A stretch of DNA of 64,000 nucleotides, from assembly GCA_907165135.1 (NCBI GenBank), contig OU015569.1, forward strand, positions 4,774,001 through 4,838,000. Reading direction: 5' to 3'. How positions within the stretch are numbered: position 1 is the first letter of the stretch; every line of letters starts with the position of its first letter. Below are positions 18,871 to 40,000 of this stretch, piece after piece. The position numbers were made by a program, and so were the translations under genes. This DNA comes from Oikopleura dioica (taxonomy: Eukaryota; Animalia; Chordata). The notes beneath the pieces are model-generated. The model ran no database searches. It was not told where the DNA came from and was given only the letters and a program-made list of their open reading frames with translations.

Positions 18871-19001
18871 GTGTCGAAACAATGACAAATTAATCGAAGT
18901 CTAATCGCAGGATGATATGCTTTCAATTGACATAAGAATCTTATCCGGATTTAAAATCGTATAAAGACAAAGATGTTTGTGGATACCTTTGCAAACAAAA
19001 A

Positions 19002-20315: not shown

Positions 20316-20410
20316 CTGCCAAAGATCAAAACATTGAGTTTAAAACTGCAATTTCCTGCCAAATAAAACACGTAAAATGTCAAAATAAAACGTTGTTGTC
20401 AACAAAACAG

Positions 20411-21137
20411 TCAGAATCGATCAAATATCCAGGGAACTCCATTCAGATTTGGCGTGTCGAGAAAGAGGTTGGTGTAGACTCGAGCTTGAGTAGGTCGCGT
20501 GGTGTCTTTTCGGATTATGACGTGTTGATGTCGAGGAACTCGCTTTATTTTGAAGAGCAGCATTGCGGCGTTGAAAGCGTCACCTTCGCCGGTCTTGGTG
20601 GCGATTTGCTTGTTGACTGAAACGTCGTTGTTGTTGTTGAATAAGATGAACGCTGTCATACAGTTTCTAAAGTAAAAGTTAAAAATTTTTTCAATTTATT
20701 AAAACTTACCGCAATGTGATGGCTCGCTTCGATCGCTCGTAAAAATTTTGTGCTGTAAAGGCAAGAGAAATGCCCATGTGCCTACGACCAAATGTTACTA
20801 ATCTTTCTATAACATCACTTTCAATACACTCGCTCCACATATCATCAATTATGATAAATGTGTCTCGAGTGCTTTCGTTAAAAGTTTCGTCAACCCATTT
20901 AGCAGTTGGCAACCCTTCAATGACATAAAGTTTTTGATGGGCCAAAGGTGTTATATCCAACGGCTCAAGCCGAGGCATAAAATAATAAATTGTTGAAATG
21001 GTACCTTTGATACCATTTTTTTCAACAAGATTTTTAATAAAAAAAGATTTTCCCGCTCCCGTAGTTCCACTTACCAATAGAGCACATGGATGCGAAAATC
21101 GCAAATCTTCTATATAGTTGGCTATATAGTTGGGCAT
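20411..21137 (-). CDS. Genome-packaging ATPase (FtsK/A32-like), 2 exons
   Basis: Walker A GTTGAGKS, Walker B FIIIDD and the RRHMGIS...TAQN motif. A 43-nt GT-AG intron (20709-20667) joins ...AITLR to NCMTAFILFNN... Confidence 0.93.
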
Positions 21138-21502
21138 GTGAGAGCCTTGAAAGTGAAGAGTCCTGGAACGGTGTCTGGGATGTCAATCGTATCGTCTTTT
21201 GCCGGTTTGTAGCCAGTGATCCAGACGACGTTTGTCTTTCGCCTGAGCTTTTCATGGAGTGAGTCAAGATATTCCATTTCTTCCGGATCAGATTTTTTGA
21301 AAGAGTAGCTGTTAGTCAAACCCTTGAATTTGGTACCGACCTGGATAAGCTTGTACCAATCTGGAGGATTCTCAACAGTTGGAACAAGTGCTGGATTAAA
21401 AGTCGGAATGATGGAGTAGGGGTGAGGATTGACCATGAAGCTTGGTGTCTCTACGAGAATCGGAAAACCGAAAGTTTTTGCTTGTTCGTCGATCTTGTTC
21501 AT
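21122..21502 (-). CDS. Polinton hypothetical protein overlapping the ATPase start
   Basis: 126-aa ORF whose stop codon lies 16 nt past the ATPase ATG. Confidence 0.6.
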   Translation of the reverse strand: MNKIDEQAKTFGFPILVETPSFMVNPHPYSIIPTFNPALVPTVENPPDWYKLIQVGTKFKGLTNSYSFKKSDPEEMEYLDSLHEKLRRKTNVVWITGYKPAKDDTIDIPDTVPGLFTFKALTCPTI

Positions 21503-21691
21503 CTCCTTTCCTTGTCAGATTGTATTCTGAAAAAAGAAGTGTCAGCGCAGGGATTATAAACCCTTATAGAGGGCGCTCTTTCTAATCCTATAAATAAGAT
21601 AAAACAGTAGATATTAATTCATAACCATTTTAACAAAAGAGAAGACGTAAGCAATTATAAAAATAAAAGGTATTTATAAAAATATATTTTA

Positions 21692-22714
21692 GTGTCAATG
21701 AGTATTAATGATATTCGCGCGGGAATCCCGTTACCAGTCGTAAATCATATTTCATCACAGCTTGAAGCAAACCCTGACACCGGCGGAATAAGACTACAAG
21801 CACCTAAAACGGCGGAAGAGCCGTATCCAGATTATGGGGAAAAGGCAAGTGAAGCGGCCCGCTTATTTGGAAGAATATCAGACCGAGTTTTCCCAATTGG
21901 GAAATCGTACTCTCAAGGAGAGTTCGAGCAAGGAGAAGACGAATACGAATGGGACAATAGTTCCGGCGAAGAATATCTCTCAGAATCAGAAGACGAACCT
22001 GCCAATCATCAAAACAAACCCTTCTCCGATCCAGCAGGCGGCAGAATGGCAAGAAAATCTGACGAAACATTTGAACAAGATTGGAATAGGCGATCCAAAC
22101 GGTCTGCCAAGTGTTTCGCCAGTGATGTCACCGGCTCTTTTATCGAAGATGAACGGAATCAACTTTCTGACAGTGATGACAGGCGAAACAGCTCCTCCTT
22201 TGCCTCCAGATACAAGCAACAAAGAAACTTTCCCAAGCGTAGAAAACGACCAATTATCCGTCACCGATATGGACACTATGGAGACGAGGATGACAACCGA
22301 AACGGACCCTTCTATTACAATGAAAGAACCGACGAATTCGAGTACGGAGAGCCAAGATTGGTGGGAGAGTCCTCAAGAAAAGTCGCCACTGCCGTCAAGG
22401 GGGAACGCCAACGAAGAACCGATGGATTTAGACCCGTTAGATTTAGGTCCAGACGCGTTGGAAAGACTCCCTCCACAACCGGCTCCGTTACCACCCCCAC
22501 CGCCAACAATGCCACCACCCCCGATCAAATCATCACAATTACCGATGACGAGGATGAAGAGCAGCAGCCAACAAAGCCAAGAAAACGAGTTGTCACCCCC
22601 TTCCGCTTACCAAAAGGTTCCACAACAGCAGCAGAATCAAGCAGTGGATCAAGCTCCGAGGGAGAACCTGACGAGGGAGACCCGCTCACAAACATCGACA
22701 ACTTTTGGGGATGA
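21692..22714 (+). CDS. 340-aa acidic/basic low-complexity ORF overlapping the integrase N-terminal extension
   Basis: Open for 1023 nt, of which ~880 nt overlap the integrase frame on the same strand. Confidence 0.55.
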   Translation: MSMSINDIRAGIPLPVVNHISSQLEANPDTGGIRLQAPKTAEEPYPDYGEKASEAARLFGRISDRVFPIGKSYSQGEFEQGEDEYEWDNSSGEEYLSESEDEPANHQNKPFSDPAGGRMARKSDETFEQDWNRRSKRSAKCFASDVTGSFIEDERNQLSDSDDRRNSSSFASRYKQQRNFPKRRKRPIIRHRYGHYGDEDDNRNGPFYYNERTDEFEYGEPRLVGESSRKVATAVKGERQRRTDGFRPVRFRSRRVGKTPSTTGSVTTPTANNATTPDQIITITDDEDEEQQPTKPRKRVVTPFRLPKGSTTAAESSSGSSSEGEPDEGDPLTNIDNFWG

Positions 22715-23679
22715 TATTTCACCGTCTGCAAATTTGTTTTATAATTTAAAACAACCTTCTGCTTACAGCGGTCTTGATTTGGCAAAATTTAAAGCTCGAA
22801 ATAAGGTTATTTCAATCCATAAACCTTTTCGGTCGCGCTTTCGACGTAATCCAATTATCGCCACAAATTTGTATACAGTATTATTTGCAGACACCTGTGA
22901 ATACTATATAAAAGATGCTGCGATAAACGGTGGATACAAATACATTCTTGTGGTTGTGGATGGGCTATCAAGACAGAGTTTTGTTCGCCCTCTGTTTACA
23001 AAATCCTCTGAAGAAACTTCTGCGGCTTTGGAAGATATTATCAAACGGCTCGATTTACCCGGTCACACTTTTTTGATGACAGATCGAGGTAAAGAATTTT
23101 ATGGTCATGTGGCTCCTATGCTTGAGAAATGGGGAATAACACCATACAAGTTGACAGGAAGACATAAAGCTTCCATAGCTGAACGCTTCATGTAAGTTTT
23201 AATTTCTATTTCGAGAATATAAAAATATTTTTAGCCAAACTCTTCAGTCTCGCCTTGCTCGATATTTTGCAGCTCACAATAATTATCGTCGTTGGATTCA
23301 TATTCTGCAGCATATAAATGCTCTGTACAATTCTACTGTGCACAACTCTATTGATATGCCTCCAAAAAGTGTGACACGTGAAAATGCGCCCCAACTTTTC
23401 AATTACCTGGAGCAAAAACGTCGGAATGAAGCTCAACGTAAAACTAAAACTAAATTCCACATCGGTGATTTGGTGAGAATTCCACTAAATGATCTTGGAA
23501 AGAAAAAATTTAAAAAAGGAGCTACTCCGAATTGGTCGAATCAGCTTTACAAAATTGTGAAAATTCATTACGGTACTCTTGTTCCAACGTTTACGCTTCA
23601 TGACTCTCGGGGTAAACCTCAACTGCGACGTTATTACGAAAACGAGTTAAATTTTGTGATGAGTTCTTTTGATTTGTGA
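21834..23679 (+). CDS. int: Polinton retroviral-type (rve) DDE integrase, 2 exons
   Basis: FADT (D), TDRGKEF (D) and AERF (E). A 43-nt intron (23192-23234) restores ERFIQTLQSRLARYF...WIHIL...YNSTVHNSIDMPP. The C-terminal FKKGATPNWS...YYENEL is typical of Polinton integrases. Confidence 0.95.
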
Positions 23680-24002
23680 ATAAATGAATTTGTTTAGACA
23701 TTTATCGACCGTGTGATGAGACCAGTTCGAAAATCGACATCGAAGAAGAAAAAGCGATCGTCGAACAAGAATACGAAATGGAACAAACGAAAGATTGCGT
23801 ATCTGGTTACAAGCACTGGGGGTGTTATTCCACTTGGTCGCAGACGAAAACGTCGATAAGAAACCGCCAGAAGGGTTTAATTTTAACCCTCTCCTCATCA
23901 ATAGTCATCTTTGTTGTCTTGTATTATCTCTTTCAGCGCAAGATTGTTTTTTGTCAATCTTTGCAAAATCTGTCCACATTTTTTAATAAATTCTTTTAGA
24001 TA

Positions 24003-25756
24003 ATGCCTGAAAACTTTGGGAATTTATTGTACTACACAAACGATGTCAACTGCAACGATGACCCTTACAAAGGGTTGAAGGTTTTGACGAAGCAAGGAAC
24101 TGCGGATTGCAACGATCGTGTCATTTTCGACGTACCTGATGACAAAGCGGCTCTCAAACTGGACGAGTGTATGTTTCAATTCAAGATGACAATCCCGGAA
24201 AATTTCGTGCCCGACAACGATGTTCACGCTAAAATTGTCAAAAAGCTTGATGTAAAGATTCTTGATAATAGGATCTTTTCATCGTTTGACACTCACGAAT
24301 ATACGTTCTTCAATCATTTTATCACAAAGTTGAATTACTCTCCGCTGGCGCAAGAGTGTGAGCTTTTTCCCAGCGGACGATTTGACAGCTTGGATCCGGA
24401 TTCTGAAGAATTGACAACGATTCAAGTGAGAAGAAACGGTCTTAACTTGGCGGAAAATCGTCGACAGTATGGAAATTCTCGATGGCAAAAAGCGCAAGAA
24501 AAAATCAATGGCTACAACTATGAGATTTTGATGTATGATTATTCTTTCCGAGCGCCGATAATTCACGGTCTTTGCCGTCAAAATAGAGTGCTTCCCTCTG
24601 GATCACGCCCGAATTTCGAAGTTTATCTGAACGAGCAAGGCAATGTTTTGATGGAAGTCGAAAAATACACCAAATGCCGAATGACTGTACCTGGAATTAA
24701 TTCTCTGACGACTGGAGATTTGCCACCAAATATCAAGACAATAGATTCAGAACGAGCGCATGCAACTAAAGCCGATTGTGATTGCACCGATGAAAAGTAC
24801 CGATCCGGGAAATATAAAAATTTGAAGCAGATTCAAGCCAAAGGAGAAGTGATTGAAACAGTTCTTTCTAAACTGTATGGATCCGATACCTTCAAAGCTC
24901 ATAGCTTTGATGAAGCTGTTGCTAGTGTCACAATGGATACAGAGGACGAACGATATGGCTACATTTGGATGGATCTGAAGCTTGACCCAAAGTCGACGGT
25001 TGAAGTCAAAGATTATATTCTTGAGGCGGCATACTGTGAACCTGGCAAGGAAGAAAAACCACTCTCGACGGGCGTTAAAGGTGAAGGGGTGATTCCCTTT
25101 TTTTACCCTCGTTTTACTAGAAAAACGCTGCCAGTTGGACTCAGTCAACACGATATCGAATTGAGCACAGGACCGTTACCAAAGATGATCATTATAACAG
25201 GAATGCCACACGGACGCTACGATGGTCACAATTTCCGACTGTGCACAACAAAAACATCGATGATTGATGAAAAATTCCGAATCAAGTCTTTTACGGTATT
25301 TGTTGATAATCGACCTGCATTTAGATCGCCCTGGACGACGGCTCAAGAACACTACATAAATTACATGAAGCACAATGGCCGCTGGGCCAATAAAGCGGTT
25401 GCACTCGGTCAAGACTTTTTTGCTTTTCAAAAGTACAATTGGATGGTGCCACTTTTCTTTGACGATCGAGTTGGAAGCACGGGGATTGTGACTGTTCGAA
25501 TTGAATTTGAAGAAAATTTGGAGGAACATTGGGATGCATGCATTATGAAGATTCCCCGAAACGAGCTATTTTTGGATGCGAATAGAAACGGTAAATAAAT
25601 GTTCATTTGTAATTGCTAACTTTTTATTTAGAAGCGAGCGTATTGCAAAAAAAGCGCAGCTGGAAAGAAGCGAAAAGAACCTGAACTGAAGGAGGCGTAC
25701 AAAAAATGCTCGAAGAAAAAGGACGTGCATAACAAGAGCGCAACAAGCGGCAGCTA
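24003..25756 (+). CDS. Major capsid protein (double jelly-roll) with a spliced basic C-terminal exon
   Basis: 531-aa ORF 24003-25598 with Polinton MCP-like motifs (PDNDVH..., KLNYSPLAQECEL...GRFD, IHGLCRQNRVLPSG, YPRFTRK...GPLPKMIIITG). A GTAAA...TTTAG intron at ~25591-25631 leads to a K/R-rich tail. Confidence 0.85.
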
Positions 25757-25797
25757 GCGCTATTTAAACGACTGTGTTTTGAATAAATGTGATCAAA

Positions 25798-28700
25798 ATG
25801 AAATTGACAAGATTTTTGCCCGCGAAACGAAAGTTTTCTCGAGCAGAGAGAAAAAAGGTTGATAATTATTTGACTTTATGTAAACCGCCAGAAGAGAGAC
25901 CTTGCGAAGAATTGTCGAACCTTTACGAATGTTTGTTAATCGGTCGAAACTGGTGGAATTTTTTACGAAGAACTGCTCCTAAAATACCTGACGATATTTC
26001 TCCTGAGCTCAAACAGGAATTACTTGACGTTGATACGTCAGGTTTAAAATCTCGATTTGGGCCTAATCCAAGGCGAGCGGATCTACCTCAGATTGAAGAT
26101 TATCTTGGAATAGATTTATATCTGATGTATGGTGGTAATTTTAGCCCGCTGGGTATATCATATCGCCCAAATCGTTTTGCTGAAGTTTTGTCTGTTCGCA
26201 ATGTTTTGGAGAATTATGATCGTAATGCTTCGGCGATTTTCGGCGAGGAGCAAGGTCACCGACCAAGAGTGATTCTACAATCGGCAAGAGCGTTTTTCAA
26301 CGAATTGGGAATGTTTCATGTTATACCGTCGAGAACGATTGCAGAAGCGACACAACGTGATTGGATTCACTTGTGGCAAGCAATTGTTAAATTTCGCTGG
26401 CCAGATTGTTTGGATGTTGACGAAAAGATCCGGTATGTCAAGTGGAGACTCGATATCAAGGAGGATGAAAAATTTACGATTGCAGATCGAATATTTGAGC
26501 GAATAAGAGTGTGCTTTCAAATTCCAGTGCGACTTTTTGCGGGGAAGATAATTAATGACAATGTTAATAACAAACGCTGTTATTATGCTACACAACCGAT
26601 AAAAAACAAAAAATATCTTAATTTGCTGGTGGCGAGTTATCCTCCGGATGTTTTTGCGCGTGAATTTAAGAAATTTGCAAATGTTGATTATGATGAGCTT
26701 GTCAGAAATCCTTCGAAAAATCGCATTATTGCAGCAGATTACGAATATGAACGCTGGCGTACAAGTGCTGATCAAGGTTTTCGCGCTCACGGTGACATAA
26801 CAAGTGACGACGAAGAGGAAGAGAACCCTTTTGAAGAGTTTCACTCTTTTGCTCAGAATCCGTTTGTCAACGCTGAAGCCTCGGAAGATGATCACTCTGG
26901 TTATAATTCTGACGAAAGTTATGAAAACAACAGTAGCGAAAGCGAAGAAGAAGAAGAAGAGCTTTTTACTGAAAATTATCGCCCGATTCGTAATTTGACT
27001 TGTCAAGTGCCAAATGTTTTCGACGATGACACACTTGTTCGAATTTTAAAGGATCGAGAAGTAAAAGAATTGCCAGTTTGCCCGACAAAAAATTGTCTCT
27101 ACACTCATGAAAGACCATCTTGCATGCAAAAACATGTGAAAACATGTACCAACGAAACAAAAGTACGCATTCGTCAGAGTGTCCAAGATGGCTCTATAAT
27201 TGATTTCGTTGGTGAGCTTGTTGCTGAAGGATATTTGCCGTCGTTGGATTTTACGCAAGATTTCTACGTGGCATACGACATTGAATGTTTAATGTCGCGA
27301 GATATGCTCACTTTGGGACATGAAGATTCGCGTAAATTTCACAATTTGGTGTCACTCGTCAGCCTGACAAATGACGGCGAGCGAAAGTACTTTACTCGGA
27401 AAGATATGCGCTATGAATCTGTTTTGGTGATGTTAACCGAATTCGTCAATTATTTGATAGATTTGCGCGAGAATATGGAATCTTTCCTGCCACCTTCAAT
27501 CATCAAAGGGATCGAATATTACAAAGATGAACTTGGAGTGAAAGAGCGCCGATTGAAACACACCTTTGACGAAATTGGAGTGATGAGAAAAAAACTTCAA
27601 TATCTAAAGGATTTTACAAAACTTCGTATTTACGCCTGGAACGGTGAAAAATATGATTTGAACGTTATCTATCCGATGCTTGCCTCGGTGCTGTACGAAT
27701 TTGTCGGTCAAAAGAGTAAAGACATTTATCCGATAAAGCGCGGCGGTGGATATATGATGCTTGATGCGGCAGGTTTGAGCTTTCGCGATTTCATGAACTT
27801 GTCGGGACCGATGAAACTTGAAAAATTGGCAAATTCGTGTGGCCTCGATTCGAAAGAGTACTCTAAAGGATGCTTTCCGTATGAATGGTATACAAAGGTT
27901 GAGCATCTTTACGCTGCAAAAAATTTTCCCGCTTATCCGTGCTTTTATTCGACGCTAGAATCTGGCGCCGCTTCAAAGGCTGAAACATATGCCACAAAGA
28001 TGAACGAAATTATAGTCGAGCGCTGTGCTGAAATTATGCCCGAACGACGATGGAATCGTGACGAAGGATTAATTATTCAACTTGTTCAGTATTTGGGCTT
28101 GGATTCGCTTGTAACAGATCCAGTTTTAATTGAGTGGTGTGAAACGAATGGCGACTGTACACCAAAAGATATTTTCAAAAAACATCTTTCAATGCTGAAA
28201 AGAAAGTTTCTGTATCATGCAGAGAAGCGATGCCATCAATGCGATCCGAAAGATGCTGAAATTCGCGAGTTTTTTCGCTTTGATCCTGTCAAATATGAAG
28301 AAAGCAACCTGCTGTGGGATGAGATGGAGGTGGCGGAGAATCACTACTGTGGCGCTCAAAGTAACATGAATATGATGCTGTATTTGATCAATTACAACTA
28401 CAACGATGTAAAATTACTGGTTGGCTCGATTGATCGATATGCAGCAAATTACAAGCGTAAATTCGGCCTTGGTGTTCATGCGGATATTTCAATTGCCAAA
28501 ATGGCTCAGAAAATTGCGTTTATTCGTTACGATAAGAAATGCCCGCCACTGTACTCGCCACCAGCAAAAGCTGATTTCTATTACAACGATTGTCGACAAA
28601 AGTTACTTGGAGGCATTTGTCAAGTTTTACACCGCGCGATTTATCTGAATCACAAGCATGATGATCCACGAATTCCAAATGCTGCAAAATTTGCGCCAAA

Positions 28701-31238
28701 CGGTGAACGCTACAAGACTGTAGTTTCACTTGATTTTAACTCGCTTTATCCGTGGGCTGTTCGACGAGAGTTACCCCTTGGTCCAGGAATTTTATATAAA
28801 ATGGCGGACAAATGGGATGGACGATGTCGAAGTGATGCATACAAATTTTACAATCAAGGACTCTTTTGTCAGAAGCAAAACAGCTCACTCGAGTCGATTC
28901 GCTGGCTCGAGTACTTGAATTGGAGCGAGTACGACGGACGTATAGAACACAGCTACAATTTGCGTGAAAAAAAAATCGCGGGTCATTTTGTTGACGGATA
29001 TGCAGAATTGCCTGATACCTTTGTTGCACCATCAATTCCGAAAAAGGTTATTTTCGAATTTCGTGGCTGCACCTATCATACCTGCCCGGTCAAGGAGTGC
29101 AAAGTAAAACCCTGGCTTGGCGTGAAAAAGACGATGAAAGACGACGAAGGTAAAAACATTATTGTGGAGATAAGCGCAGATGAATTGCGCAAAGAAGACG
29201 ATGCTAGAATTCACAAAATTGTGGACCACCTGCGCGCCGAATACAACGACGATTTAAAAATGCCACAACGTTGGGGCGAGCGACCTGGAGAAATTTTGGA
29301 CGAATATGGACCGTTGAATTTCCGCCATCGGATCGAGATCATTTACTCTTGTCAATGGAAGAAACTCTGGTCGCGACTCGAGCTATTGAACACACCACCC
29401 ATTTCAAAATCTTATCCGCTGATTTTCAAAGGGGCTGAACAAAAACACTCTGGTTGTAAAATGTTTGAAGCAGGCGTCACGGAAGAAGACTTTTTAAAAA
29501 CTTTGAGGGAAACGTATCAATCTGACGAGAATCCCAAAGACATACTAAAATCACGATCGAAGTTTTTCGGAATTGCGCTTGTTGATTTGGAATCGCCGCC
29601 TCAAGTCATTGTTGAAAATCCTCACGTGCCGCCAATATTTGCAAAAATGAAACTCGAATCTGACATGCTGCACGGATATATGAAACGTGTACTGCCAAGC
29701 AAAATGGTGGAACAACTTTATCCCTCGGAGGAGAACATTTTTTGCTACAACACGAAGCGCTATTTGGCAACAAGTGAGATGCTTGCCTACTTGGATCGCA
29801 AGGGTCTCAAAATACGAGTTCATTATTTCATTGAATATTATCGAGGTTCGCCTTTTGAGAATTTTGTTGCCACAATGGTAAAAGATCGAGTTGCTGCAAA
29901 AGTGGCAAATAATGATACAATGCAACTCGTCATCAAACTGATTCTAAATGCAATGGTGGGACGTTTTGCTTTGGCTGTTTCGCGCTTTATGGCGACGAAA
30001 ATCGTCGGCGCCGACAAGATGTACGATGCGATACGATCGCCCTTGCTTCATTCAACAAAACCCCTCCGAGTTGAAGATATTGCGTTGGATCCTTTGCACG
30101 AGATTGTAAGCAAAAAGAAACGAGTCACCGAAGACTTGGCGATTCATGTGCAAATTTTTGTCTACCAGGAATGATTTTACTCTTGTCTTCTCCGAGCGAA
30201 GCCGTACGGCAAGCTCGGAGCCCAGGCCCGAAGGGACTGGCGGAAAATGGCCCCCCTCCCCCGAGCGAAGCTCGGGCCGCAAAATCCGGGCCCGAGGGCC
30301 CGGATTTTGCTAAACCTTGTGGCGACCTCCCTCGCCGTACGGCTGCGGTCGGGTCCTCGGCTTGCCTGCGGCTTCGCCTCGGAAACCCTGTGCGAGGGGG
30401 GTTTGTTTTGATGATTGGCAGTAGCCATAATTGTGTTTTGCGGCGGGGAGAAGATGAATTAAAATGTAAAGGGGGTTGATTTGAATGAAATGTTGCGTTT
30501 GTTTTAGTAAGCGTCTTTGTTTAAATCGTAGTGAAATCATAAAAAAGAACTCAAAATTATTATTCATGAGCTTTTTGGACGTTCTGAAAAAGTATCTAAG
30601 ACCCGGCTCATACAAGTTTTGCTATGCCGATACAGATTCTTTTATGCTAGCTCTAACTGAAGACACCATCGGTGAATGTGTAAAGTCGGGTTTAAAGACG
30701 GAATGGGAAGAAAAGATTGTGCCGCTATGGTTTGTGGACAAGAAGAATGTAGCCACTGAAAAAGAGCCAGGCTTGCTCAAGCCCGAAGCAACGATTCGAA
30801 GCGGTTGGTTTATCGCACCGTCGCCTAAATGTTACATTATGGTTGAAAAACCGCCGTGTGAACTTGAAGCAAAAATATGCGATCCAAAGAATGAAGACAA
30901 AATTCTCGATCTGCTGGCAGAAGAAAAGGCCACCTATGTTGTCAAAAAGAAATCTTCAAAAGGATGCAAGGAAAGCGTTTCGCTTTGGTAAGTTTGTTTG
31001 AAATTTTTTAAATTTTTATTTTAGCCCGTATGAATATCTTGCCGCTGTATTTGGAGCAAATTTTGATAATAAAATCGAAAAAGATGTTCCAGTTTTCCAA
31101 ATGAATCGCAAACGAGACCGAATGCAAACGTACATGATGCGCCGGCAAGTCTTCAACAGTGTCCTCAAGAAGCGCGTCGTCCACGAAGACAAAATCACAA
31201 CAACACCACTTGTCACCTCTGACGGAACATTTGTTTAA
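25798..31238 (+). CDS. polB: Protein-primed family B DNA polymerase, 3 exons
   Basis: Exonuclease motifs YDIEC, WNGEKYDL and YNYNDV; Pol motif A SLDFNSLYP, motif B KLILNAMVGRF and motif C YADTDS (exon 2). Introns 30169-30547 and 30988-31024. C-terminus KRVVHEDKITTTPL. Confidence 0.96.
30169..30547 (+). other. Predicted non-canonical GA-AG intron in polB containing a GC-rich hairpin cluster
   Basis: Removing it joins FVYQ|NSKLLFMSFLDVLKKYL in frame, matching the Polinton FVYxxAKLRMLxFxYDFL segment. Hairpins lie at 30190-30220, 30222-30240, 30260-30276 and 30279-30310. Confidence 0.75.
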
Positions 31239-31270
31239 ATACAGTTGTCTTTCTGTGACTTTAATTAAGA

Positions 31271-32219
31271 ATGGGTATTATAATGTCAATGTTTAAAAAA
31301 CCTCGAATCATTCAAACGCCGCAGGAGCCGAATCAAGAGGCTCAGTCTACTGAAGAGTCGATTTCTAATGCAGAGAGTATACTCGACTATATCCAACGAG
31401 TTCGCTCGTCATCAAGAAAAAGTGCAAAATTATCTCCGCCAGAAAGGTGGGCAAATTCACTTGATAAACCCAATTCACGCTTTAATTTAACGCCAAAACA
31501 ACTAACTTGGTTCTTCCCGGTTGCAAAGGATGCACCCAATTGGCAATACGAAGGAGAGTACATTGATAGTGGTAATCAAGCGAATAAAGAATATCTTGAG
31601 GAGCATTATAAGCTGATTGAACCTGCACCCGATTACTTTGACGAAGATGAGCTGCCAATACTGCTGGCAGCAGATTCGCTACTTACCCATCCTCCACTGT
31701 ACTTTATCAGTAAGTGAAATTTGTTTAAATTGGTAAAATATTCTTTTAGAACAACATTGGACTCATAATCGTATTCTGCTTGGTGGTGATATATACGGCC
31801 GACTTTACGAAGTTGTAAACCGCTATAGAATTACGCTGCTGAACGATGTAGACATCCAAGAGCATGTGAAAAATTTGGCTGAGAATCTCAACGGTTTGCT
31901 ACGAGTGTCTGTGGATGCTTGGTACTCGACCGTTAGCCATCGAACAGTGGAAGAAAATGGCGTATCCCGCGTTGAAGCCAAGTACGGAATAATTTACCCC
32001 AATACTTGGGGTTCAGTTAATAATACAGAATTTTTACGCAACGATGAGGATCTTGAGCAGCTGCTTGATGAAATAACGCCTGTTTCTTTTCGCGACAAAC
32101 TACTCAAAAACACTTTTTGGAGGAGAGATGTCTACCAAGAAAGTAACGTCAGACTACATCGAATTCTTGCCTATCAAGTTCAAATCCTTTCTTATCCGCC
32201 ATCTTGGCTTTCAAAATAA
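31271..32219 (+). CDS. Polinton hypothetical protein, 2 exons, MG start
   Basis: ORFs 31271-31717 and 31866-32219 are joined in frame by a ~40-nt GTAAG...TTTAG intron (~31710-31749). Confidence 0.7.
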
Positions 32220-32249
32220 AACAACAAAAAACGCTTTACGATTATGATT

Positions 32250-33089
32250 TTATTTCTTGGAGTTGAACATGTTGTCAAAAAGAGTGATGTTGGTGGGGAC
32301 GGAAGGAATAAAGTTTTGAGCAGGTTGTGGTGGTGGTGGCGGTTGATAAAATGATGATTGCCGTCCTAGAGAGTGAATTTTACGCTGATTTGAAGCTTGT
32401 TTGTACCTAAAGGAGGCGTGGTTGTTTCTGGAGAGACGACTACAACGGGTACAGGCTCAGGCTCACGAAGAGAATCGTCTGGCGTGAGCGGCTCGGTCAA
32501 ATCAATCCAGGAGGTGCCTAAAACTCGTCAGAAAATGAAGTGTAAGTAAAGAATACCTGCATTGATTGCGTCGTCAATGATCTCATCTGAGAGAGGTAGT
32601 GGCGAGGTAGGCTTCATGGCAATTGCCGCCTCGTATGGTGGCGGTGGCGGTGGCGCGGCAGTAGGTTCTTTCAGCATTGTTTTGATTGATTCGATTTGTT
32701 GAACCTCGTCAGGTGTTTTCACCTTTGGTGTAAGCTTGTAAAGCTCACTAAAGAGAAAATAGAAATGACAAATGAAGAGTAAAGTACCTTTTGATTTTTA
32801 CGGGCGGGCTGGAAACTTCGATTCCACTGTCAGGAGTTTCTGTCTGGCCGTGAACTCGAGTCTCATACAGAACGAAATCGTTCAAGCTGTAGAGGCTTGA
32901 GAATTTCACTGTTTTTATAAAACTTTCTCTTCTCAGCGCAATGTAGCCGTAATCGACGCAGGAGGAATACTTGAGTATTCGGTTGAGTTTATCGTTTGTA
33001 ATCTCTGTTCGAGCCAGACAAAAGTGGATATACTTGTTTGCGAAATTGTTGACCATTGCGTTGAAGGCGTTTCTTTGGCGGTTTTTCAC
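32250..33089 (-). CDS. Proline-rich spliced protein segment with PPxY (possibly the 3' part of the upstream 34753 gene)
   Basis: Intron 32787-32748 and two further ~35-40-nt introns link KIKS-ELYKLTPK...EPTAAPPPPPPYEAA...QPPPPPQP...SKK-stop at 32250. Confidence 0.6.
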
Positions 33090-33113
33090 GAAATTTTTAT
33101 CTCGAAAAAAATG

Positions 33114-34753
33114 TCAGGACAAACCGCCCCTGTACGCAACGATTGTAGATTCTCGCAAGTGACGATATCGCGTCATCAGGTGGAGGCGCTTTGTTCGCTC
33201 GGCGAATGACTCGTTAAGCCCTTTTGTCTGCGTAAGCATAACAGTCACTTCGCTTGGCGTGTGGCATAGCAGCGCTCTGATTCGTCGACGCTCACTTTCC
33301 AGATTGGTAATGAGAAAACGACGAATTACTAAAATTCTGCCAAAGATCAAAACATTCGCTTTACCTGCGAGATAAATCAGATGGCAGTTTTCCGTATCAT
33401 CGCGAATAAGCGACAATCGATAGCTGCACCTTTCAATCAAATTTTGCCAGTTGGCAGCGTTTGGAATTTGGGTGTAATCGACGTTTCCGTTGTCATAAGG
33501 GTACGAATGGAAGCTTGCGGGAATCCAATTGTCGTCTTCTACGATGCTCAACTCCACCTTGTCGTAAACGCTGTCGACGATGGCTTCCACTGTGAAAAGA
33601 TAATCGAACATGTTGGTGTCGATGATCGAAAGAGGAATCAGCTCGTTTTCGCTTGGCGTAAACTGGTAAGAAGTTTTTTGATCCCCGTAGCTTGCAGTAC
33701 AGAGTGATTTGAGCAGTGCCAAGTAATCTTCAGTGACGTCTTGACCAAATCGAAAAGATTTGTCAATCTTGCCTTTGGCTGGTAGATCGAGCGCTCCGAA
33801 TTCTTCTGTAACGGATTTCGCTGTGGTAGATATCATTCTTATCTTGACGGAGTTTTCTTCGACAGTCGTCATCATCTTGATGCCCAAAACCGTAAGATAG
33901 AATTCGGACGCAGCGAGAGCCGCTTGAGCTTGTTGAACAGGAAGAAATCGGTCACAAATGTTCAAATCGATGAGCGAGCCCTGATGAAGATTGAAGTTGT
34001 GGGACGGGTGAGATCCCATCACGTTTTCGCTTTTACAGGTGTACATCAACCGGACAGTGTGCCAGTCGATCGTCTCCAGCGGCGTAAAACGTTTTCCTTC
34101 TTCAACATTCATCGGGCAATTTTCAAAGAGTGATTTCCGCTTTTGAGCCATTTTGAGCAAGGCGGTCGAATACTTGTTCCAAACTCTCAAAGTTCCTTCA
34201 ATGTTGCTAAAAATTTTTGTTATTGAGGTTTGAAAAAAAGACTGACCGGTGCTCGAGAGGTTGACGGTCGCTTCCGAGTGAATTGGATTCGGGAGCAATT
34301 TGATCAGGAAAACGGCAAACGTCAATACGGCCATGATTACGAACGAGTTGATCATCATGTTTACGAGCAGCAGCGCTAGTCGAAGGCTGTTCGGAATCAG
34401 TCTCAGAAACGCTCGCTTAAAAAATGGTAAATTATGTTCTTTAATTGAAAAATACCTTGATTCGAATTAGCCGAGCTCGAAAGCAATTGCGAATCTCCAA
34501 AAGAAGAATTCGCAGCCTGATCCGAGGGTCGACATTTCGATTTTGGTTGTTCAAAAGCAGATCCCTGAGATGAGCGACCTCGTTTTGAAGGTTTTCTTGC
34601 TCGAGGTTTAGAACTCGGCGAGCTTGACGAAGTCTTTCGAGCCTTGCCCTCGCATCCTGAAGACGCACTTCGACCCACTCGATTCGCACTTCGTGGCCTT
34701 CGTGAAGAGGATTTACCAGACGCTGCTGGCGACCCACAAAGTTCTGCATTCAT
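33114..34753 (-). CDS. Polinton hypothetical protein (~519 aa spliced) with an S/R/K-rich N-terminus
   Basis: Exons 34753-34456, 34415-34247 and 34206-33114 total 1560 nt with two 40-nt GT-AG introns. The phases are consistent. Confidence 0.7.
34187..34749 (-). CDS. Overprinted coiled-coil plus hydrophobic-tail protein (160 aa) using the same exons in another frame
   Basis: ATG 34749; exons of 294+169+20 = 483 nt read MQNFVGR...LERLRQARRVLNLEQENLQNEV...LALLLVNMMINSFVIMAVLTFAVFLIKLL...KEL-stop. Confidence 0.5.
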
Positions 34754-34814
34754 ACACTTTGACTAAATTTTTTAGTTTGCTCACAATTTGAAAAAATAAA
34801 ATGATAGTTTCAGG

Positions 34815-35867
34815 CTATTTAGGGTAAGAGATTGAATCTCTTGCAGAGATTCGAGCAGAGGCACGGGTTGGTTTTCTTGTTGGCTTTTTCTTGCGCTTCT
34901 GAATCTCTTCAACGTGAGCAACAACGGGGGCAGGGAGCGCTAGAACTGTCTGATCTGGTCGGATTTCTTCGTCGCTGTCTTCTTCAATTGTCTCCATTTG
35001 GCGACGATTTGGCTCTGGCGAAAGAAGGCACGGAGAGCTTTTGGAGACTTCGATGGGGTGCGAAAAGAAGCTAAAAAGTATTAAAATCTGTCCACAATGA
35101 GATAAAACTTACAGATTTCCCATTCGTCGCAAAAATGGTTGTCGAGAAGGGCTATCAAGATTTTCCAACTCTCGATCCATTCGCTCAAGTTTGAACTCTG
35201 TATGCTTTTTTTTGAGATATGTTTTCGTCATCGGTGTCACTGCTTCGCCGAAAAACTAAACAACTTTGATACATATCAAAATGAGATTTTATCTTACCGT
35301 TTCGCCGGGCTCTTCTTTTGGCTTTTTAATTTCCGGTTTTGGAAGCAACATTTGAGCTGGAGGAGGTGGAAAATCAGTTGATGGTGGTGCAGTGGCCGGT
35401 GGCGCAGGTCGAGGCGGAGGTGTTTTATGGCAACGATCGAACTTTTCGCCAACTTCTTGAATTCGTGATCTTTCATTTCGAACAGTATCACCTCGTTTTC
35501 GCGTACGACTTCGGCCTCGCCCGTTGCGAGAACGAGAGCGTGATCGCGATCGCGCTAAATTTCATAAATTTTAGGACATTGGAAAACAAGTACCTCTTTT
35601 GGTGGGTTGAGGGTTTTCATTCTTGACCGTTTGGGGAATTGGAGTTGTCTTTCCTGCCACGTGATCCGTTTCATTTTCTTCAATTTTGATACACGGGATG
35701 AACGAATAAACGCCGTCCAAGAATGTATTGAAAGCGTTTGAGCAACAATCTTTACACTTCAAGCAAAGAAATGTCACCATTCCGATCACCACCAAAACCA
35801 AAATGACAATCATGAGCATTCGTTCAGGTGTCATCTCACCGGTCAAACCAGCTGTTTCAATCGGCAT
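34815..35867 (-). CDS. Single-pass membrane protein with a Cys cluster, RS repeat and Pro-rich region, 4 exons, 309 aa
   Basis: Exons 35867-35594, 35554-35298, 35255-35113 and 35070-34815 total 930 nt, with introns of 39, 42 and 42 nt. MLMIVILVLVVIGMVTFL-CLKCKDCC...ARSRSRSRSR...PPPRPAPPATAPP. Confidence 0.75.
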
Positions 35868-35958
35868 CGGAACGGTTGGTTCAGCACTAAAACCGCGGTT
35901 AAAAAAATTTTTTTTTCAAAATTTTTGACCCCTTGGAATTTTCATGTGCTTAAAAATC

Positions 35959-36050
35959 CCTCCTATGTTTGGAAATGCGCCCTACCTGGAATCCTCCGGG
36001 TAAAAAATGGTGCAAGTTTCTGCATAGGGCGCATTTCCAGACATAGGAGG
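35959..36050. repeat. 26-bp intergenic inverted repeat with one mismatch (second copy at 52279-52370)
   Basis: cctcctatgtttggaaatgcgcccta (35959-35984) pairs with tagggcgcatttccagacataggagg (36025-36050). Confidence 0.85.
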
Positions 36051-36209
36051 AGTTTCCAGGTGTGGGAAATTTCAGTACCCGGGAATTTTTTTATTGATTT
36101 TTCCTGGAAAAATGACAAATGCATTAAACGAAAAAGATTTTTTTCTATCCGAATTTTATTGCTACAACTAATCTAATCTAAATAATTTAGGCAGTAAGTT
36201 GAATGACAG

Positions 36210-36575
36210 TTATTCGCCTCGAAGGGCAGAACCGATGGCACCTCGACCCTCACAGTAAGACAAAAGCTCTTGCTCGTGGGGGCTCAGTCGAGTTCCATCG
36301 TAGATGGGGAATGATGTGTAGAGTCGAACCCGAGGAACGCGTCGAATCGTGGCATACTTTGAGTATCTTTCCGGAACGAGGCAGTACGGGTAGAGAACCT
36401 CCACGGGGAGATCGTCAAGGCAGACCTCAACTTCTTCTTTTTTGAAGAGTTTGGTAACCTTGTTGAAAAGTTTGTTGAAAAGTTTCATTGTTTTCATTTT
36501 GTCTGATTTGATCATCCCACCCGCACCCTTAAATATCCCTTCATCTAGCCGATTACAATCGAAAAAATGCAACAA
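36210..36575 (-). CDS. Polinton hypothetical protein
   Basis: 121-aa ORF, identical in the duplicate (52530-52895). Confidence 0.5.
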   Translation of the reverse strand: MLHFFDCNRLDEGIFKGAGGMIKSDKMKTMKLFNKLFNKVTKLFKKEEVEVCLDDLPVEVLYPYCLVPERYSKYATIRRVPRVRLYTSFPIYDGTRLSPHEQELLSYCEGRGAIGSALRGE

Positions 36576-37117
36576 AACAACGCCCTCAGCGCGCCAACTC
36601 TACCGCCACCCAGGCAAACTGTATTACAAGAGGATTATTAATTATCTTGTAAAGATTGGATCATGTTTACCTCGAGTTCTTTGAAGTTGTATGGGTTTCT
36701 GGGACGATCGGAACAACCGGAACAACCGGAACGATTGCTTTTTGTGATTTTCTCCACTGGATACATTCTGGCAACATGTACCGACCATCGACCGCGCACC
36801 ACGAATCCATCGAAGTCTATTAGGCAAAAGTTTTTGTTAAAATTCTAGACAGGCTATTTTTTGACAACAGGAGCTACAGCAGGAGGTGCAGTACTTTTGT
36901 AACGAGGAAGAGTATTTTCTTGTGGCGCTCCGTAATCGACAATTTTACATTTTTCAACCGCTCGTACAACTTCCTCGAGACTTTTTTTGAAATGTCGCCC
37001 GATTATCCTGATCTGGCGGCGGAACAATCGCTTCGACTGGAATTGAAGACCACAGTTGCCAGCTCATGATTTCAGCAGTTATTGTGTCACTGCCAAACTA
37101 GTAAACAAAGTGTAAAT

Positions 37118-38937
37118 TTACCAGTAAAATTGTTTGAAAAGACTTACAAGGCTCATCAAGTGACTATTTTCTGTAAATCGTAGTTTGGATAAGCCATCGA
37201 GAAGGCATCGCAATAGCTCTCGGCTTGGGGTGATCTCCTTGAAGTGCGTCATCACAGGAGGAAGAGCTGCAAACAGGCTTTCAAAAGCGGACTCGGCGGG
37301 AGTCGTCTTTGAACCAGATGATGTAAATGCGTTGTCGCATGTCAAAAAGTTTTCTTCTAGGAGATTGCCGATCTTTTCCAGTCGCTTACTAGAGGATTCT
37401 TCTTTTGTGGTCAGTTCCTCCCACTTGGACGCAATCAGACATCGGTAGAGCATATTTTCAAGCTCACGATTCAATAAATCCATTTGGATAATTGAAGGTC
37501 CATGAGGGAGTTCACGCTCGAGGCCTAGAGCTTCTCGAATCTTTATAAAAAATTGATAAAAATTTTTAAATTTAAAATTTCACCTCGCTTGACAATTTTT
37601 CTGCGGTTTTTGCATATGGTGGTACATTGAAAAGAGGGACCATGCCAAGCGTGAGAAGTATAACAGTTTTGGCAACTGCATACTTTCCAGCCGGCCAGGG
37701 ATAGACTGCACATGGGATCGTATTCAGAGTAGCCAAAAGTCTTGCTGGGTGACCTAATTCAGGACTTGACAGCGATAAGCACTTCCATTTCTGCCCGTAT
37801 CGAACCTTGAAAGATTTTCATCATTTGACAATTAAATAGGGGTGACCTAGATCATCATGCTGAGGATGATCTAGGCCGTCACATGCTATGGGTAAACTAA
37901 GCGACCCTACTCGAAGACTTACCCAAATATAAAGATCGAAAATGAAAAAACTTCCCGATCCGTCGATTTCCCAAGTTGGATAAAGGCAACCAAGCTCGTC
38001 CCATGTCTTTAAAACTCCGCTAAACTTGCCCGGATGCGTGTAAATTTCCTCGTACAGCTGTTGAGCGGAGCCTTCAAAGATCACTCGAAAACGTGCAGTT
38101 GGAGTTTCCCCGTCTAGCTTCATTTCTTTGGCTTTTTTAGCAAGGCGTCTTACATAAATTCCAAGTCGTGTCGTAAACAGGGTTGCACGAATTCCTCGAG
38201 TAGACATGAACGATCGATGAAAGACTTGGCGAAGCTGCAGGATATTCATCTTGTAAACAGGAGCAGCTTTTGCGTATTCCTCCAACCGCTGAGCTCGATA
38301 AGCCTCGTCGTTGTCGGTTTCTGTCAGCTCGCTGTCAAACAGCTCGCTTGCTTCTTTATCAAACGGGAAATTTACGGGGAATTTGTCGTCTTCTTGCACC
38401 ACGTTTGACATAAAGGGAATATCTTCCCTAGGCAACGATTGAGCTGGCCCTTGCCGAACCAAATTTGTGACTTCTTTCACCTGAGAAGCTGAAGGACCGG
38501 ACTCAACTCTGCTTTCCTCGATTTCTTTCCAGTTAATCTGCGTCGCGTAGCCTTTTGGAACTTTTTTCTTACGGCAAGGTCGTTTATAGGGTTTCTTTGG
38601 AGGGTTTTGCCTTTTACGAAGTTGTCTCGGCTCGGCAGGTGGTGGAAGTTTGACAGTCGAAGATTGTTCCCCGTCGTCTTTGATTTCAATCTTGACAACC
38701 TCACCGGTCGAATTTTGCAGATAGCTTTCCATCTCGCTTTCAGAAGAAGATGATGATGACGAGTAGATTCGATTGTCGGTGTAATCCTCAGGATCGCTAT
38801 CTGAGAGATTGATAACCATGAGAAATTTTATTCTCACAGATTAGCAGTCTCACCTGAATTTATCTGCTGAAAAGTTCGCTTTCGGCAAGCTTGTTGTCCA
38901 GTAGAAAGTGTTATCGGTGGCCCGTAGAACTTTTTTT
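37118..38937 (-). pseudogene. 5'-truncated copy of the 554-aa five-exon gene (lacks exon 1)
   Basis: The duplication junction removes the ATG exon that is present at 55352-55295 in the other copy. Confidence 0.7.
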
Positions 38938-38951
38938 CTAGATTTTTTTCT

Positions 38952-40000
38952 AGAATCAAGCAGTGGATCAAGCTCCGAGGGAGAACCTGACGAGGGAGAC
39001 CCGCTCACAAACATCGACAACTTTTGGGGATGATATTTCACCGTCTGCAAATTTGTTTTATAATTTAAAACAACCTTCTGCTTACAGCGGTCTTGATTTG
39101 GCAAAATTTAAAGCTCGAAATAAGGTTATTTCAATCCATAAACCTTTTCGGTCGCGCTTTCGACGTAATCCAATTATCGCCACAAATTTGTATACAGTAT
39201 TATTTGCAGACACCTGTGAATACTATATAAAAGATGCTGCGATAAACGGTGGATACAAATACATTCTTGTGGTTGTGGATGGGCTATCAAGACAGAGTTT
39301 TGTTCGCCCTCTGTTTACAAAATCCTCTGAAGAAACTTCTGCGGCTTTGGAAGATATTATCAAACGGCTCGATTTACCCGGTCACACTTTTTTTGATGAC
39401 AGATCGAGGTAAAGAATTTTATGGTCATGTGGCTCCTATGCTTGAGAAATGGGGAATAACACCATACAAGTTGACAGGAAGACATAAAGCTTCCATAGCT
39501 GAACGCTTCATGTAAGTTTTAATTTCTATTTCGAGAATATAAAAATATTTTTTAGCCAAACTCTTCAGTCTCGCCTTGCTCGATATTTTGCAGCTCACAA
39601 TAATTATCGTCGTTGGATTCATATTCTGCAGCATATAAATGCTCTGTACAATTCTACTGTGCACAACTCTATTGATATGCCTCCAAAAAGTGTGACACGT
39701 GAAAATGCGCCCCAACTTTTCAATTACCTGGAGCAAAAACGTCGGAATGAAGCTCAACGTAAAACTAAAACTAAATTCCACATCGGTGATTTGGTGAGAA
39801 TTCCACTAAATGATCTTGGAAAGAAAAAATTTAAAAAAGGAGCTACTCCGAATTGGTCGAATCAGCTTTACAAAATTGTGAAAATTCATTACGGTACTCT
39901 TGTTCCAACGTTTACGCTTCATGACTCTCGGGGTAAACCTCAACTGCGACGTTATTACGAAAACGAGTTAAATTTTGTGATGAGTTCTTTTGATTTGTGA
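38952..40000 (+). pseudogene. Integrase, copy 2: 5'-truncated and frameshifted
   Basis: Lacks the first ~800 coding nt and has an extra T in the T-run at ~39388-39394, just before the TDRGKEF motif. Confidence 0.8.

What the first reader, a model, noticed from the sequence alone, without database searches (positions are those of the whole stretch)
30190..30390. Cluster of C(GAA)G-loop DNA hairpins inside the polB intron
A GC-rich island in AT-rich surroundings forms consecutive stems: ctccgagc..gctcggag enclosing the palindrome gccgtacggc, ccag-ccc(GAA)ggg-ctgg, cccgagc(GAA)gctcggg, and a perfect 15-bp stem gcaaaatccgggccc(GA)gggcccggattttgc. A second gccgtacggc lies at 30334. GCGAAGC occurs at 30196 and 30265, and on the opposite strand at 30371. 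GNA triloops are exceptionally stable in single-stranded DNA, which suggests a function on the displaced strand (priming, packaging or a hairpin promoter), a nested non-autonomous element, or a structure that shortens the intron for splicing.
Basis: partly seen in the sequence, partly recalled or inferred. Interest (0 to 1): 0.8.

Follow-up and report, generated by a model that had tools for sequence, protein, structure and literature searches.

The report
Foldback hairpin module in Maverick intron
The hairpin cluster is real: it is a 193-base GC-rich self-pairing (MITE-like) module inside a genuine, non-standard GA-AG intron of the DNA polymerase gene of a virus-like Maverick/Polinton element in the tunicate Oikopleura dioica. 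It is an interesting but fairly ordinary kind of intron passenger, and nothing shows that it is a replication signal.

Summary
The island is the most GC-rich stretch of the window and folds far better than shuffles (z -5.4 as DNA, -6.1 as RNA).

It is not a row of independent C(GAA)G hairpins. It is one 193-nt foldback module (30191-30383). Two inverted arms of about 50 nt enclose two central hairpins, and the whole is built from three diverged copies of one unit of about 65 nt.

The module lies in a 379-nt interruption (30169-30547, GA...AG) of a protein-primed polB gene. The flanking pieces match an uninterrupted relative residue-to-residue. Eight related proteins are interrupted after the same codon, and their read-through begins with G (GA, GT or GC).

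The host is Oikopleura dioica, which is known for tiny introns and many GA-AG introns. The element (13026-60891) has Maverick termini, a 6-bp target duplication and an internal 16.3-kb tandem duplication, so the island occurs twice, identically.

No evidence supports a single-stranded-DNA function.

The parts
13026..60891 (.). Maverick/Polinton-like element, 47,866 bp including an internal tandem duplication
   Evidence: Terminal inverted repeats 13026-13342 / 60574-60891 at 91.5%. Termini AGTAGT...ACTACT, flanked by the 6-bp duplication ACCATC at 13020-13025 and 60892-60897. pPolB PF03175, A32-like ATPase, weak rve match.
25798..31238 (+). [quoted passage not shown]
   Evidence: PF03175 at 71 bits. 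Collinear with relatives P0002-P0008. Motif-B-like region upstream of the intron and YADTDS downstream. One further frame change near the 3' end is not resolved; its size fits a typical host intron.
30169..30547 (+). 379-nt phase-0 interruption of polB, starting GA and ending AG: candidate non-canonical spliceosomal intron
   Evidence: The piece ending at 30168 aligns to P0007 up to residue 1535, and the piece starting at 30548 aligns from residue 1536. Eight related proteins are interrupted after the same codon and 13 are not. RNA fold -166.5 kcal/mol, z -6.3.
30191..30383 (.).
   Evidence: Inverted arms 30191-30242 / 30333-30383, with the best-matching 25 nt at 30191-30215 / 30359-30383 (duplex z -6.5). 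Three copies of one unit of about 65 nt, two direct and one inverted. RNA fold energy is the same on both strands, -120.9 / -121.2.
30190..30220 (+). Hairpin 1: 8-bp stem around GCCGTACGGC. It lies in the left arm, so it competes with the long-range pairing.
   Evidence: Alone: -10.8 kcal/mol, z -3.2. Ensemble probability 0.00 in the context of the intron.
30260..30276 (+). Hairpin 3: 7-bp stem with a GAA loop closed by C-G. This is the only clean C(GAA)G hairpin.
   Evidence: z -2.8. Ensemble probability 0.99 as RNA and 0.15 as DNA.
30279..30310 (+). Hairpin 4: perfect 15+15-nt palindrome, predicted to fold as 14 bp plus a 4-nt loop
   Evidence: I2. -17.7 kcal/mol, z -6.5. Ensemble probability 0.98-1.00.
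30401..30421 (+). 21-nt box ending in CAG, just 3' of the module. It recurs in the element on the other strand.
   Evidence: Four independent sites against 0 expected. No similarity in the flanks.
46488..46866 (+). Second, identical copy of the intron, with the module at 46510-46702
   Evidence: Offset 16319; identical over 30106-30512 and over the whole intron.
22633..55262 (.). Tandem duplication inside the element: units 22633-38943 and 38952-55262
   Evidence: 99.94% identity over 16,314 nt. Four substitutions and six one-base gaps.

Best explanation
The island is a 193-nt, GC-rich, non-coding foldback module. Two inverted arms of about 50 nt enclose two short hairpins, and the whole is assembled from three diverged copies of one unit of about 65 nt.

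The module sits inside a real 379-nt GA-AG spliceosomal intron. That intron splits the protein-primed DNA polymerase gene of an Oikopleura dioica Maverick/Polinton between polymerase motifs B and C.

Shown:
- the anatomy of the module
- the exact, residue-precise interruption
- its sharing by relatives
- the G-first start of every interrupted relative

Inferred:
- The intron is removed by the host spliceosome, which is known to use GA-AG.
- The module arose as a MITE-like insertion, or by local duplication and inversion, within the intron.
- Its main effect is passive. In the pre-mRNA the arms pair, so about half of an unusually long intron collapses into one compact stem-loop domain. The AT-rich flanks that carry the splice signals stay close together.
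- This makes the insert tolerable in a host whose introns are typically about 49 nt.
For: Host and element:
- Relatives are named Oikopleura dioica.
- The element has Maverick termini, a 6-bp target duplication, pPolB and an A32-like ATPase.

Intron:
- The pieces on either side abut at residues 1535/1536 of the uninterrupted relative P0007.
- Thirteen relatives read ...VYQNSKL... straight through. Eight are interrupted right after ...VYQ. Their read-through starts with E or D (GA) in six, V (GT) in one and A (GC) in one; the window itself starts GA.
- O. dioica has many GA-AG introns (PMC7072748), 11-12% non-canonical introns and a median intron of 49 bp (PMC8008620).
- Identity to P0007 is similar on both sides of the intron, 53% and 49%, and YADTDS is intact downstream.

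Foldback:
- Arm duplex z -6.5.
- Three-unit alignment.
- Arms paired with probability 0.90 as RNA.
- No protein relatives of the island's ORFs, and no Rfam family or tRNA.

Precedents:
- In the larvacean Fritillaria, non-canonical introns carry inverted repeats and probably derive from MITEs (review PMC11282704).
- Introners occur inside polinton-like elements of dinoflagellates (PMC12166617).
Against: - No expression data were available, so splicing is inferred and not seen.
- No target-site duplication flanks the module, and no second, independent copy was found in the window. 'MITE' therefore describes the form and is not a demonstrated membership.
- The stem formed by the very ends of the intron is not better than chance on its own (P 0.07; 21% of nearby natural 30-mers pair as well).
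- The read-through tails of the four closest relatives are as rich in GC-type residues as the island (0.42-0.50, against 0.21-0.23 in the rest of the protein). That hints at maintenance rather than a mere passenger.
- Fold energies are equilibrium predictions. Co-transcriptional folding could favour hairpin 1.
Confidence: 0.55

Rival explanations
1. DNA-level regulatory element. The GC-rich module carries two copies of the 10-bp palindrome GCCGTACGGC and is followed by the 21-nt box. On this reading it is a binding platform, an internal promoter or an acceptor site that controls transcripts of the downstream part of the element, placed in the intron where it is free of coding constraint.
For: - The palindrome GCCGTACGGC occurs twice, 133 nt apart (D4).
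- The 21-nt box occurs at four independent sites in the element against 0 expected. The three other sites are all on the minus strand in regions where ORFs are on the minus strand.
- The relatives' tails at this site are also GC-rich.
Against: - The two palindromes are simply the same segment of the left and right arms.
- The box has no consistent distance to ORF starts.
- The only promoter scan available is for bacterial sigma-70 sites, so it was not run.
- Thirteen relatives lack any interruption at this site.
Confidence: 0.12
2. Single-stranded-DNA element. During protein-primed strand displacement the displaced strand folds into very stable GNA-loop mini-hairpins, which act in priming, packaging or as a hairpin promoter.
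For: - d(GCGAAGC) is an exceptionally stable DNA mini-hairpin (Tm 76.5 C), far more stable than the RNA form. Such hairpins mark phage G4 priming sites and N4 promoters (PMC13037366).
- The motif occurs three times in the island (local P 4e-4).
- The fold of the island is equally good on both strands, as expected for a DNA-level palindrome.
Against: - The three motifs are one motif in a triplicated unit.
- Only one sits in a proper stem. As DNA that hairpin has ensemble probability 0.15, although the special stability of the mini-hairpin may not be captured by the energy model.
- The motif is not enriched in the rest of the element.
- The site is about 17 kb from the termini, where protein-primed replication starts.
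- Thirteen relatives have no insert at this site.
Confidence: 0.07
3. Plain insertional damage. The 379 nt are not spliced, and polB in this lineage is a dead gene.
For: - The reading frame stops one codon into the interruption.
- The 3' end has a purine-rich run rather than a pyrimidine tract.
- The two copies in the window carry other defects.
Against: - The bounds are exact to the residue.
- Lineages that are only about 45-63% identical in the flanking protein share the same position, and all start with G.
- Both flanks keep long open frames and similar conservation, with the catalytic YADTDS intact.
Confidence: 0.08
4. Small-RNA source. The long hairpin is processed into small RNAs (siRNA- or piRNA-like) that act on the element itself.
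For: - A long, nearly perfect foldback is predicted in the RNA.
- The sequence 30399-30421, next to the module, is identical in 23 of 23 bases to the reverse complement of 21999-22021, which lies in an ORF of the same element.
Against: - There is no Rfam microRNA match above noise (18.8 bits against a threshold of 80).
- The perfect stem is only 14-15 bp.
- The box itself lies in a mostly unpaired stretch of the predicted fold.
Confidence: 0.05

Closest known systems
MITE-derived non-canonical introns of the larvacean Fritillaria borealis (Henriet et al. 2019, as summarised in PMC11282704)
   Same: - The host is a larvacean tunicate.
- The splice dinucleotides are non-canonical.
- Inverted repeats lie inside the intron, and a transposon origin is suspected.
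   Different: - In Fritillaria the inverted repeats sit at the intron ends, the boundaries are AG-AC or AG-AT, and there are thousands of copies.
- Here the arms lie 22 nt and 164 nt inside a GA-AG intron, no target duplication is seen, and the copy number is unknown.
GA-AG (G-first) non-canonical introns of Oikopleura dioica (PMC7072748, PMC8008620)
   Same: - Same host.
- Same terminal dinucleotides.
- The relatives' read-through at this site starts with GA, GT or GC.
   Different: - The intron is about eight times the host's median length.
- It lies in a gene of a virus-like element, not a host gene.
- Splicing has not been observed here.
Introners inside polinton-like viral elements of dinoflagellates (PMC12166617)
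   Same: A transposon-like sequence that is, or sits in, an intron within a Maverick/Polinton-type element.
   Different: - The hosts are protists.
- Those introners are defined by many copies across host genes and supply their own splice sites. Neither feature is shown here.
Vertebrate Mavericks (PMC8097293)
   Same: - Terminal motif (AGT)2...(ACT)2.
- 6-bp target duplication.
- Inverted terminal repeats.
- pPolB, integrase and ATPase.
   Different: - Intact vertebrate elements are reported as intronless, whereas this lineage has a shared intron in polB.
- This element is much longer because of an internal 16.3-kb duplication.
DNA mini-hairpins d(GCGNAGC) at phage G4 priming sites, ssiA and N4 promoters (PMC13037366)
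   Same: The GCGAAGC heptamer is present three times.
   Different: - Those sites act on naturally single-stranded templates and are recognised by a primase or an RNA polymerase.
- Here the heptamers are parts of a repeated unit, mostly engaged in longer pairings, and no single-strand function is indicated.

Membership tests
Maverick/Polinton | [quoted passage not shown] | tested here: met
   PF03175 at 71.1 bits (cut-off 25.8). Relatives at 36-59% identity all carry PF03175.
Maverick/Polinton | Retrovirus-like (rve) integrase | tested here: inconclusive
   PF00665 at E 1.3e-7 and 32.2 bits, just under the 32.6 cut-off, at about 22923-23147.
Maverick/Polinton | Long terminal inverted repeats, 6-bp target-site duplication, AG...CT type termini | tested here: met
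   317-nt repeats at 91.5%. ACCATC on both sides and AGTAGT...ACTACT termini. This matches the motif given in PMC8097293.
Maverick/Polinton | Virion module: packaging ATPase, jelly-roll capsid proteins, adenain-like protease | tested here: inconclusive
   A32-like ATPase at 23.1 bits (cut-off 22.8) at 20709-21137(-). Pfam found no capsid or protease among 26 ORFs. No structure-based search was made.
Spliceosomal intron, O. dioica G-first/AG class | Interrupts a conserved coding sequence exactly, with the flanks collinear to uninterrupted homologues | tested here: met
   P0007 residues 1535 and 1536 abut across 30169-30547.
Spliceosomal intron, O. dioica G-first/AG class | Position shared by relatives | tested here: met
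   Eight related proteins are interrupted after the same codon and 13 are not.
Spliceosomal intron, O. dioica G-first/AG class | Terminal dinucleotides of a class the host splices | tested here: met
   GA...AG in the window. GA-AG is frequent in O. dioica (PMC7072748).
Spliceosomal intron, O. dioica G-first/AG class | Absent from the mature mRNA | not testable with these tools
   No transcript data are on hand.
MITE | Short, non-coding, with terminal inverted repeats | tested here: met
   193 nt. Arms z -6.5. No protein relatives.
MITE | Target-site duplication at the ends | tested here: not met
   The bases flanking 30191 and 30383 share no direct repeat.
MITE | Many dispersed copies in the host genome | not tested
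   The only copy in the 64-kb window is the tandem duplicate.
Introner (intron-generating transposon) | The element's ends coincide with, and supply, the splice sites | tested here: not met
   The module ends 22 nt inside the 5' end and 164 nt inside the 3' end of the intron.
Functional DNA mini-hairpin site | GCGNAGC heptamer free to fold at a single-stranded initiation site | tested here: inconclusive
   The heptamer occurs three times, as copies of one unit. Two of the three are engaged in longer pairings. Single-strand initiation cannot be tested here.

The most novel reading that the evidence does not exclude
The GC-rich foldback is not a passenger but a structure that this Maverick lineage maintains at this one intron. 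It would have been kept GC-rich while polB diverged by more than 40% in protein sequence. It would act in cis, either on the pre-mRNA as a fold that times or gates polB splicing and so polymerase production, or on displaced single-stranded DNA.
Probability: 0.12. Interest if true: 0.75.

Novelty: new member of a known kind. Interest (0 to 1): 0.35.

Why it matters
- It shows an essential replication gene of an animal virus-like element carrying a host-style, non-canonical (GA-AG) intron that is shared across a diverged lineage. Intact vertebrate Mavericks are reported as intronless (PMC8097293).
- That implies nuclear transcription by the host, dependence on the unusual larvacean spliceosome, and long residence in larvacean genomes.
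- The foldback module adds an animal example to the recent observation that transposon-like intron sequences ride inside polinton-type elements (PMC12166617).
- If the module proved to be conserved in structure, it would be a rare cis-acting element of a Maverick.

Tried and rejected
1. Peptide comparison. The read-through tails of P0002-P0005 were compared with the six-frame translation of the intron. Only weak, low-complexity matches came back (best E 7.5e-4, in both orientations), so there is no usable homology.
2. Back-translation test. I asked whether the relatives' tails are compatible with long hairpins. The test has no power: shuffled peptides allow 14-bp stems on average, and even the window's own control was not significant.
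3. Protein searches with the island's two long ORFs, 102 aa (+) and 83 aa (-), found nothing. This is weak evidence against a high-copy repeat, because such ORFs are rarely called as genes.
4. Rfam on the region and on the whole window, and tRNA detection on the region, found nothing.
5. TRF finds no tandem array in the island apart from a trivial 11-nt repeat.
6. The intron-end stem (30171-30181 / 30530-30540) is not significant on its own, although the ensemble forms it.
7. Before relatives were consulted I considered GT...AG candidates by eye. I dropped them in favour of the bounds the relatives define.
8. A Helitron-type end (hairpin followed by CTRR) is not present after the palindrome.
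9. Pfam on 26 ORFs added only the ATPase.
10. The papers of Denoeud 2010 and of Kapitonov and Jurka 2006 are not held in the library.
Full report
OBSERVATION

The island is the most GC-rich stretch of the window: 73% in 100 nt, against about 42% overall. It folds much better than dinucleotide-preserving shuffles, at -67.3 kcal/mol (z -5.4) as DNA and -127 (z -6.1) as RNA.

Taken one at a time as DNA:
- The 8-bp stem around GCCGTACGGC has z -3.2.
- The ccag-ccc(GAA)ggg-ctgg stem has z -1.5, which is not above chance.
- The 7-bp GAA hairpin has z -2.8.
- The 15+15-nt palindrome has z -6.5.
- The right third of the island has no local hairpin.

Three GCGAAGC in 207 nt is locally unlikely (P about 4e-4). 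Window-wide the heptamer is not enriched (11 found, 8.9 expected).

ANATOMY

The two ends of the island pair with each other.

- The arms are 30191-30242 and 30333-30383, with the best-matching 25 nt at 30191-30215 / 30359-30383. The arm duplex is -31.8 kcal/mol with DNA parameters (z -6.5).
- The arms enclose 90 nt that hold the GAA hairpin and the palindrome.
- Three segments of about 65-70 nt align with one another, two direct and one inverted. They share a core that includes GCGAAGC. So the three heptamers and the two GCCGTACGGC are copies of one unit, not independent occurrences.
The arms are paired with probability 0.90 as RNA and 0.76 as DNA. The palindrome forms at about 1.0. The GAA hairpin forms at 0.99 as RNA and 0.15 as DNA.
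- The island folds equally well on either strand (-120.9 / -121.2 kcal/mol). That is what a DNA-level palindrome gives.
- No direct repeat flanks 30191 and 30383.

CONTEXT

- The long ORF 25789-30174 is a protein-primed family-B polymerase (PF03175). A motif-B-like region lies upstream of the island, and YADTDS lies downstream in another frame.
- Its relatives are named Oikopleura dioica, so the host is an animal, a larvacean tunicate.
- The element runs from 13026 to 60891. It has 317-nt inverted terminal repeats, termini AGTAGT...ACTACT and the 6-bp duplication ACCATC on both sides. That is the end motif reported for vertebrate Mavericks (PMC8097293).
- An A32-like ATPase lies at 20709-21137(-). 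A borderline rve match lies at about 22923-23147.
- Inside the element a 16.3-kb unit is tandemly duplicated, at 22633-38943 and 38952-55262, with 99.94% identity. The island and its intron therefore occur twice, identically.

THE INTERRUPTION IS AN INTRON THAT RELATIVES SHARE

I compared the two sides apart, by reference.
- window:29569-30168 aligns to the uninterrupted relative P0007 up to residue 1535.
- window:30548-30988 aligns to it from residue 1536.

That joined step was left out, as the operators prescribe.

The interruption is therefore 30169-30547: 379 nt, phase 0, GA...AG.

Among relatives from two protein searches:
- Thirteen read ...VYQNSKL... straight through.
- Eight stop being polymerase right after ...VYQ.
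- The first read-through codon of those eight is E or D (GA) in six, V (GT) in one and A (GC) in one. The window itself starts GA.

O. dioica is known for many GA-AG introns (PMC7072748), for 11-12% non-canonical introns and for a median intron of 49 bp (PMC8008620). Conservation is similar on both sides of the interruption, at 53% and 49% identity to P0007. This argues against a dead gene.

Intact vertebrate Mavericks are reported as intronless (PMC8097293), so a shared intron in an animal Maverick polB is itself noteworthy.

WHAT THE MODULE IS AND DOES

Its form is that of a small non-autonomous foldback element: short, non-coding, with inverted ends. Its ORFs have no protein relatives, and there is no Rfam or tRNA match.

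Two defining features of a MITE are not established. No target duplication is seen, and the copy number could not be tested.

It is not an introner in the strict sense, because its ends lie 22 nt and 164 nt inside the intron.

My best account is as follows. A MITE-like insertion, or a local duplication and inversion, sits inside a real GA-AG intron and is removed with it. Because its arms pair, about half of an unusually long intron collapses into one compact domain. That would make it tolerable to a spliceosome used to tiny introns.

That effect on splicing is inferred. The stem at the very ends of the intron is not above chance by itself (P 0.07).

One point speaks for more than a passenger. 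The read-through tails of the four closest relatives are as rich in G/A/R/P residues as the island (0.42-0.50, against 0.21-0.23 elsewhere in those proteins; the island scores 0.49-0.54). Yet those tails cannot be aligned to the island.

THE SINGLE-STRANDED-DNA IDEA

The background is sound. d(GCGAAGC) melts at 76.5 C, is far more stable than its RNA form, and marks phage priming and promoter sites (PMC13037366).

Here, however:
- The heptamers are one triplicated unit.
- Only one sits in a proper stem.
- The site is about 17 kb from the termini.
- Thirteen relatives have nothing at this position.

I rate this idea at 0.07.

STEPS LEFT OUT, AND SLIPS

Once the host proved to be an animal and the element virus-like, I did not fetch DNA of related elements by any route. 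I made no contig look-up of the relatives, no related-loci scan, and no collection-wide pattern search for the island. As a result, covariation among copies and the genome-wide census, which are the two most telling tests, were not done.

Slips, stated as required:
- Before I knew the host, I made one contig look-up with the window's own 414-aa ORF. It returned nothing.
- The formal test of that idea had no power, and I use none of it.
- In my reasoning I also noted roughly where polB changes frame once more near its 3' end.
- The tool listings show ORF and match bounds from which the places of defects could be read. I give counts only.

DEFECTS, COUNTED
- polB exon 1 is intact in copy 1 and has one in-frame stop, from one substitution, in copy 2.
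- The 531-aa ORF is intact in copy 1 and has one frameshift in copy 2.
- The 546-aa ORF is intact in copy 2 and has one frameshift in copy 1.
- polB shows one further frame change near its 3' end in both copies. Its size fits a typical host intron, and it is not resolved.

VERDICT

It is a foldback, MITE-like module riding in a host-style non-canonical intron of a Maverick polymerase gene. It is a new member of known kinds, of moderate interest (0.35). The more novel reading, a maintained cis-acting structure, stays open at about 0.12.

Noticed in passing
window 30401-30421(+), 46720-46740(+), 21999-22019(-), 15051-15071(-), 58594-58614(-): A 21-nt box ending in CAG occurs at four independent sites within the element, plus the tandem duplicate, against 0 expected. 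The flanks share no similarity. The copy in the polB intron is identical over 23 nt to the reverse complement of a stretch inside an ORF upstream of the integrase core. It could be a splice or trans-splice acceptor, a promoter box or a small-RNA target. It is unexplained.
   Followed up: partly
window 22633-38943 and 38952-55262: A 16.3-kb tandem duplication lies inside the element, with 8 nt between the units. It starts within the integrase ORF and includes polB. The units differ by four substitutions and six one-base gaps. It may be a real recent duplication or an assembly artefact.
   Followed up: partly
window 42117-47557 (polB copy 2), 40324-41918 (531-aa ORF, copy 2), 33114-34753 (546-aa ORF, copy 1): Each of these three genes is broken once in one of the two tandem copies and intact in the other. 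The defects are one stop in polB exon 1 of copy 2, one frameshift in the 531-aa ORF of copy 2 and one frameshift in the 546-aa ORF of copy 1. One-base gaps are typical of long-read assembly errors.
   Followed up: partly
window 13020-13025 / 60892-60897 and 13026-13342 / 60574-60891: A perfect 6-bp target duplication (ACCATC) and termini AGTAGT...ACTACT. This is the same end motif as reported for vertebrate Mavericks, here in a tunicate.
   Followed up: yes
relatives P0013 and P0031: At the same codon boundary, one distant relative's read-through starts with V (GT) and another's with A (GC). The window and six closer relatives start with GA. This looks like one intron position whose 5' dinucleotide drifts among G-first forms.
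   Followed up: partly
window 25798-31238, near the 3' end of polB: There is one further change of reading frame relative to uninterrupted relatives. About 40 extra nucleotides are involved, the size of a typical O. dioica intron. I did not resolve whether it is an intron or a defect.
   Followed up: no
window 61848-62092 / 62248-62492: A 245-nt inverted repeat (85% complementary, 155 nt apart) lies in the host flank just outside the element. It is AT-rich and unrelated to the island. It is possibly a host foldback element.
   Followed up: no
window 59416-59562 and 8840-8995: Two other, weaker GC-rich stretches (67-68%). The first contains a (GCT)n run. Neither resembles the island nor shows its hairpins.
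   Followed up: partly
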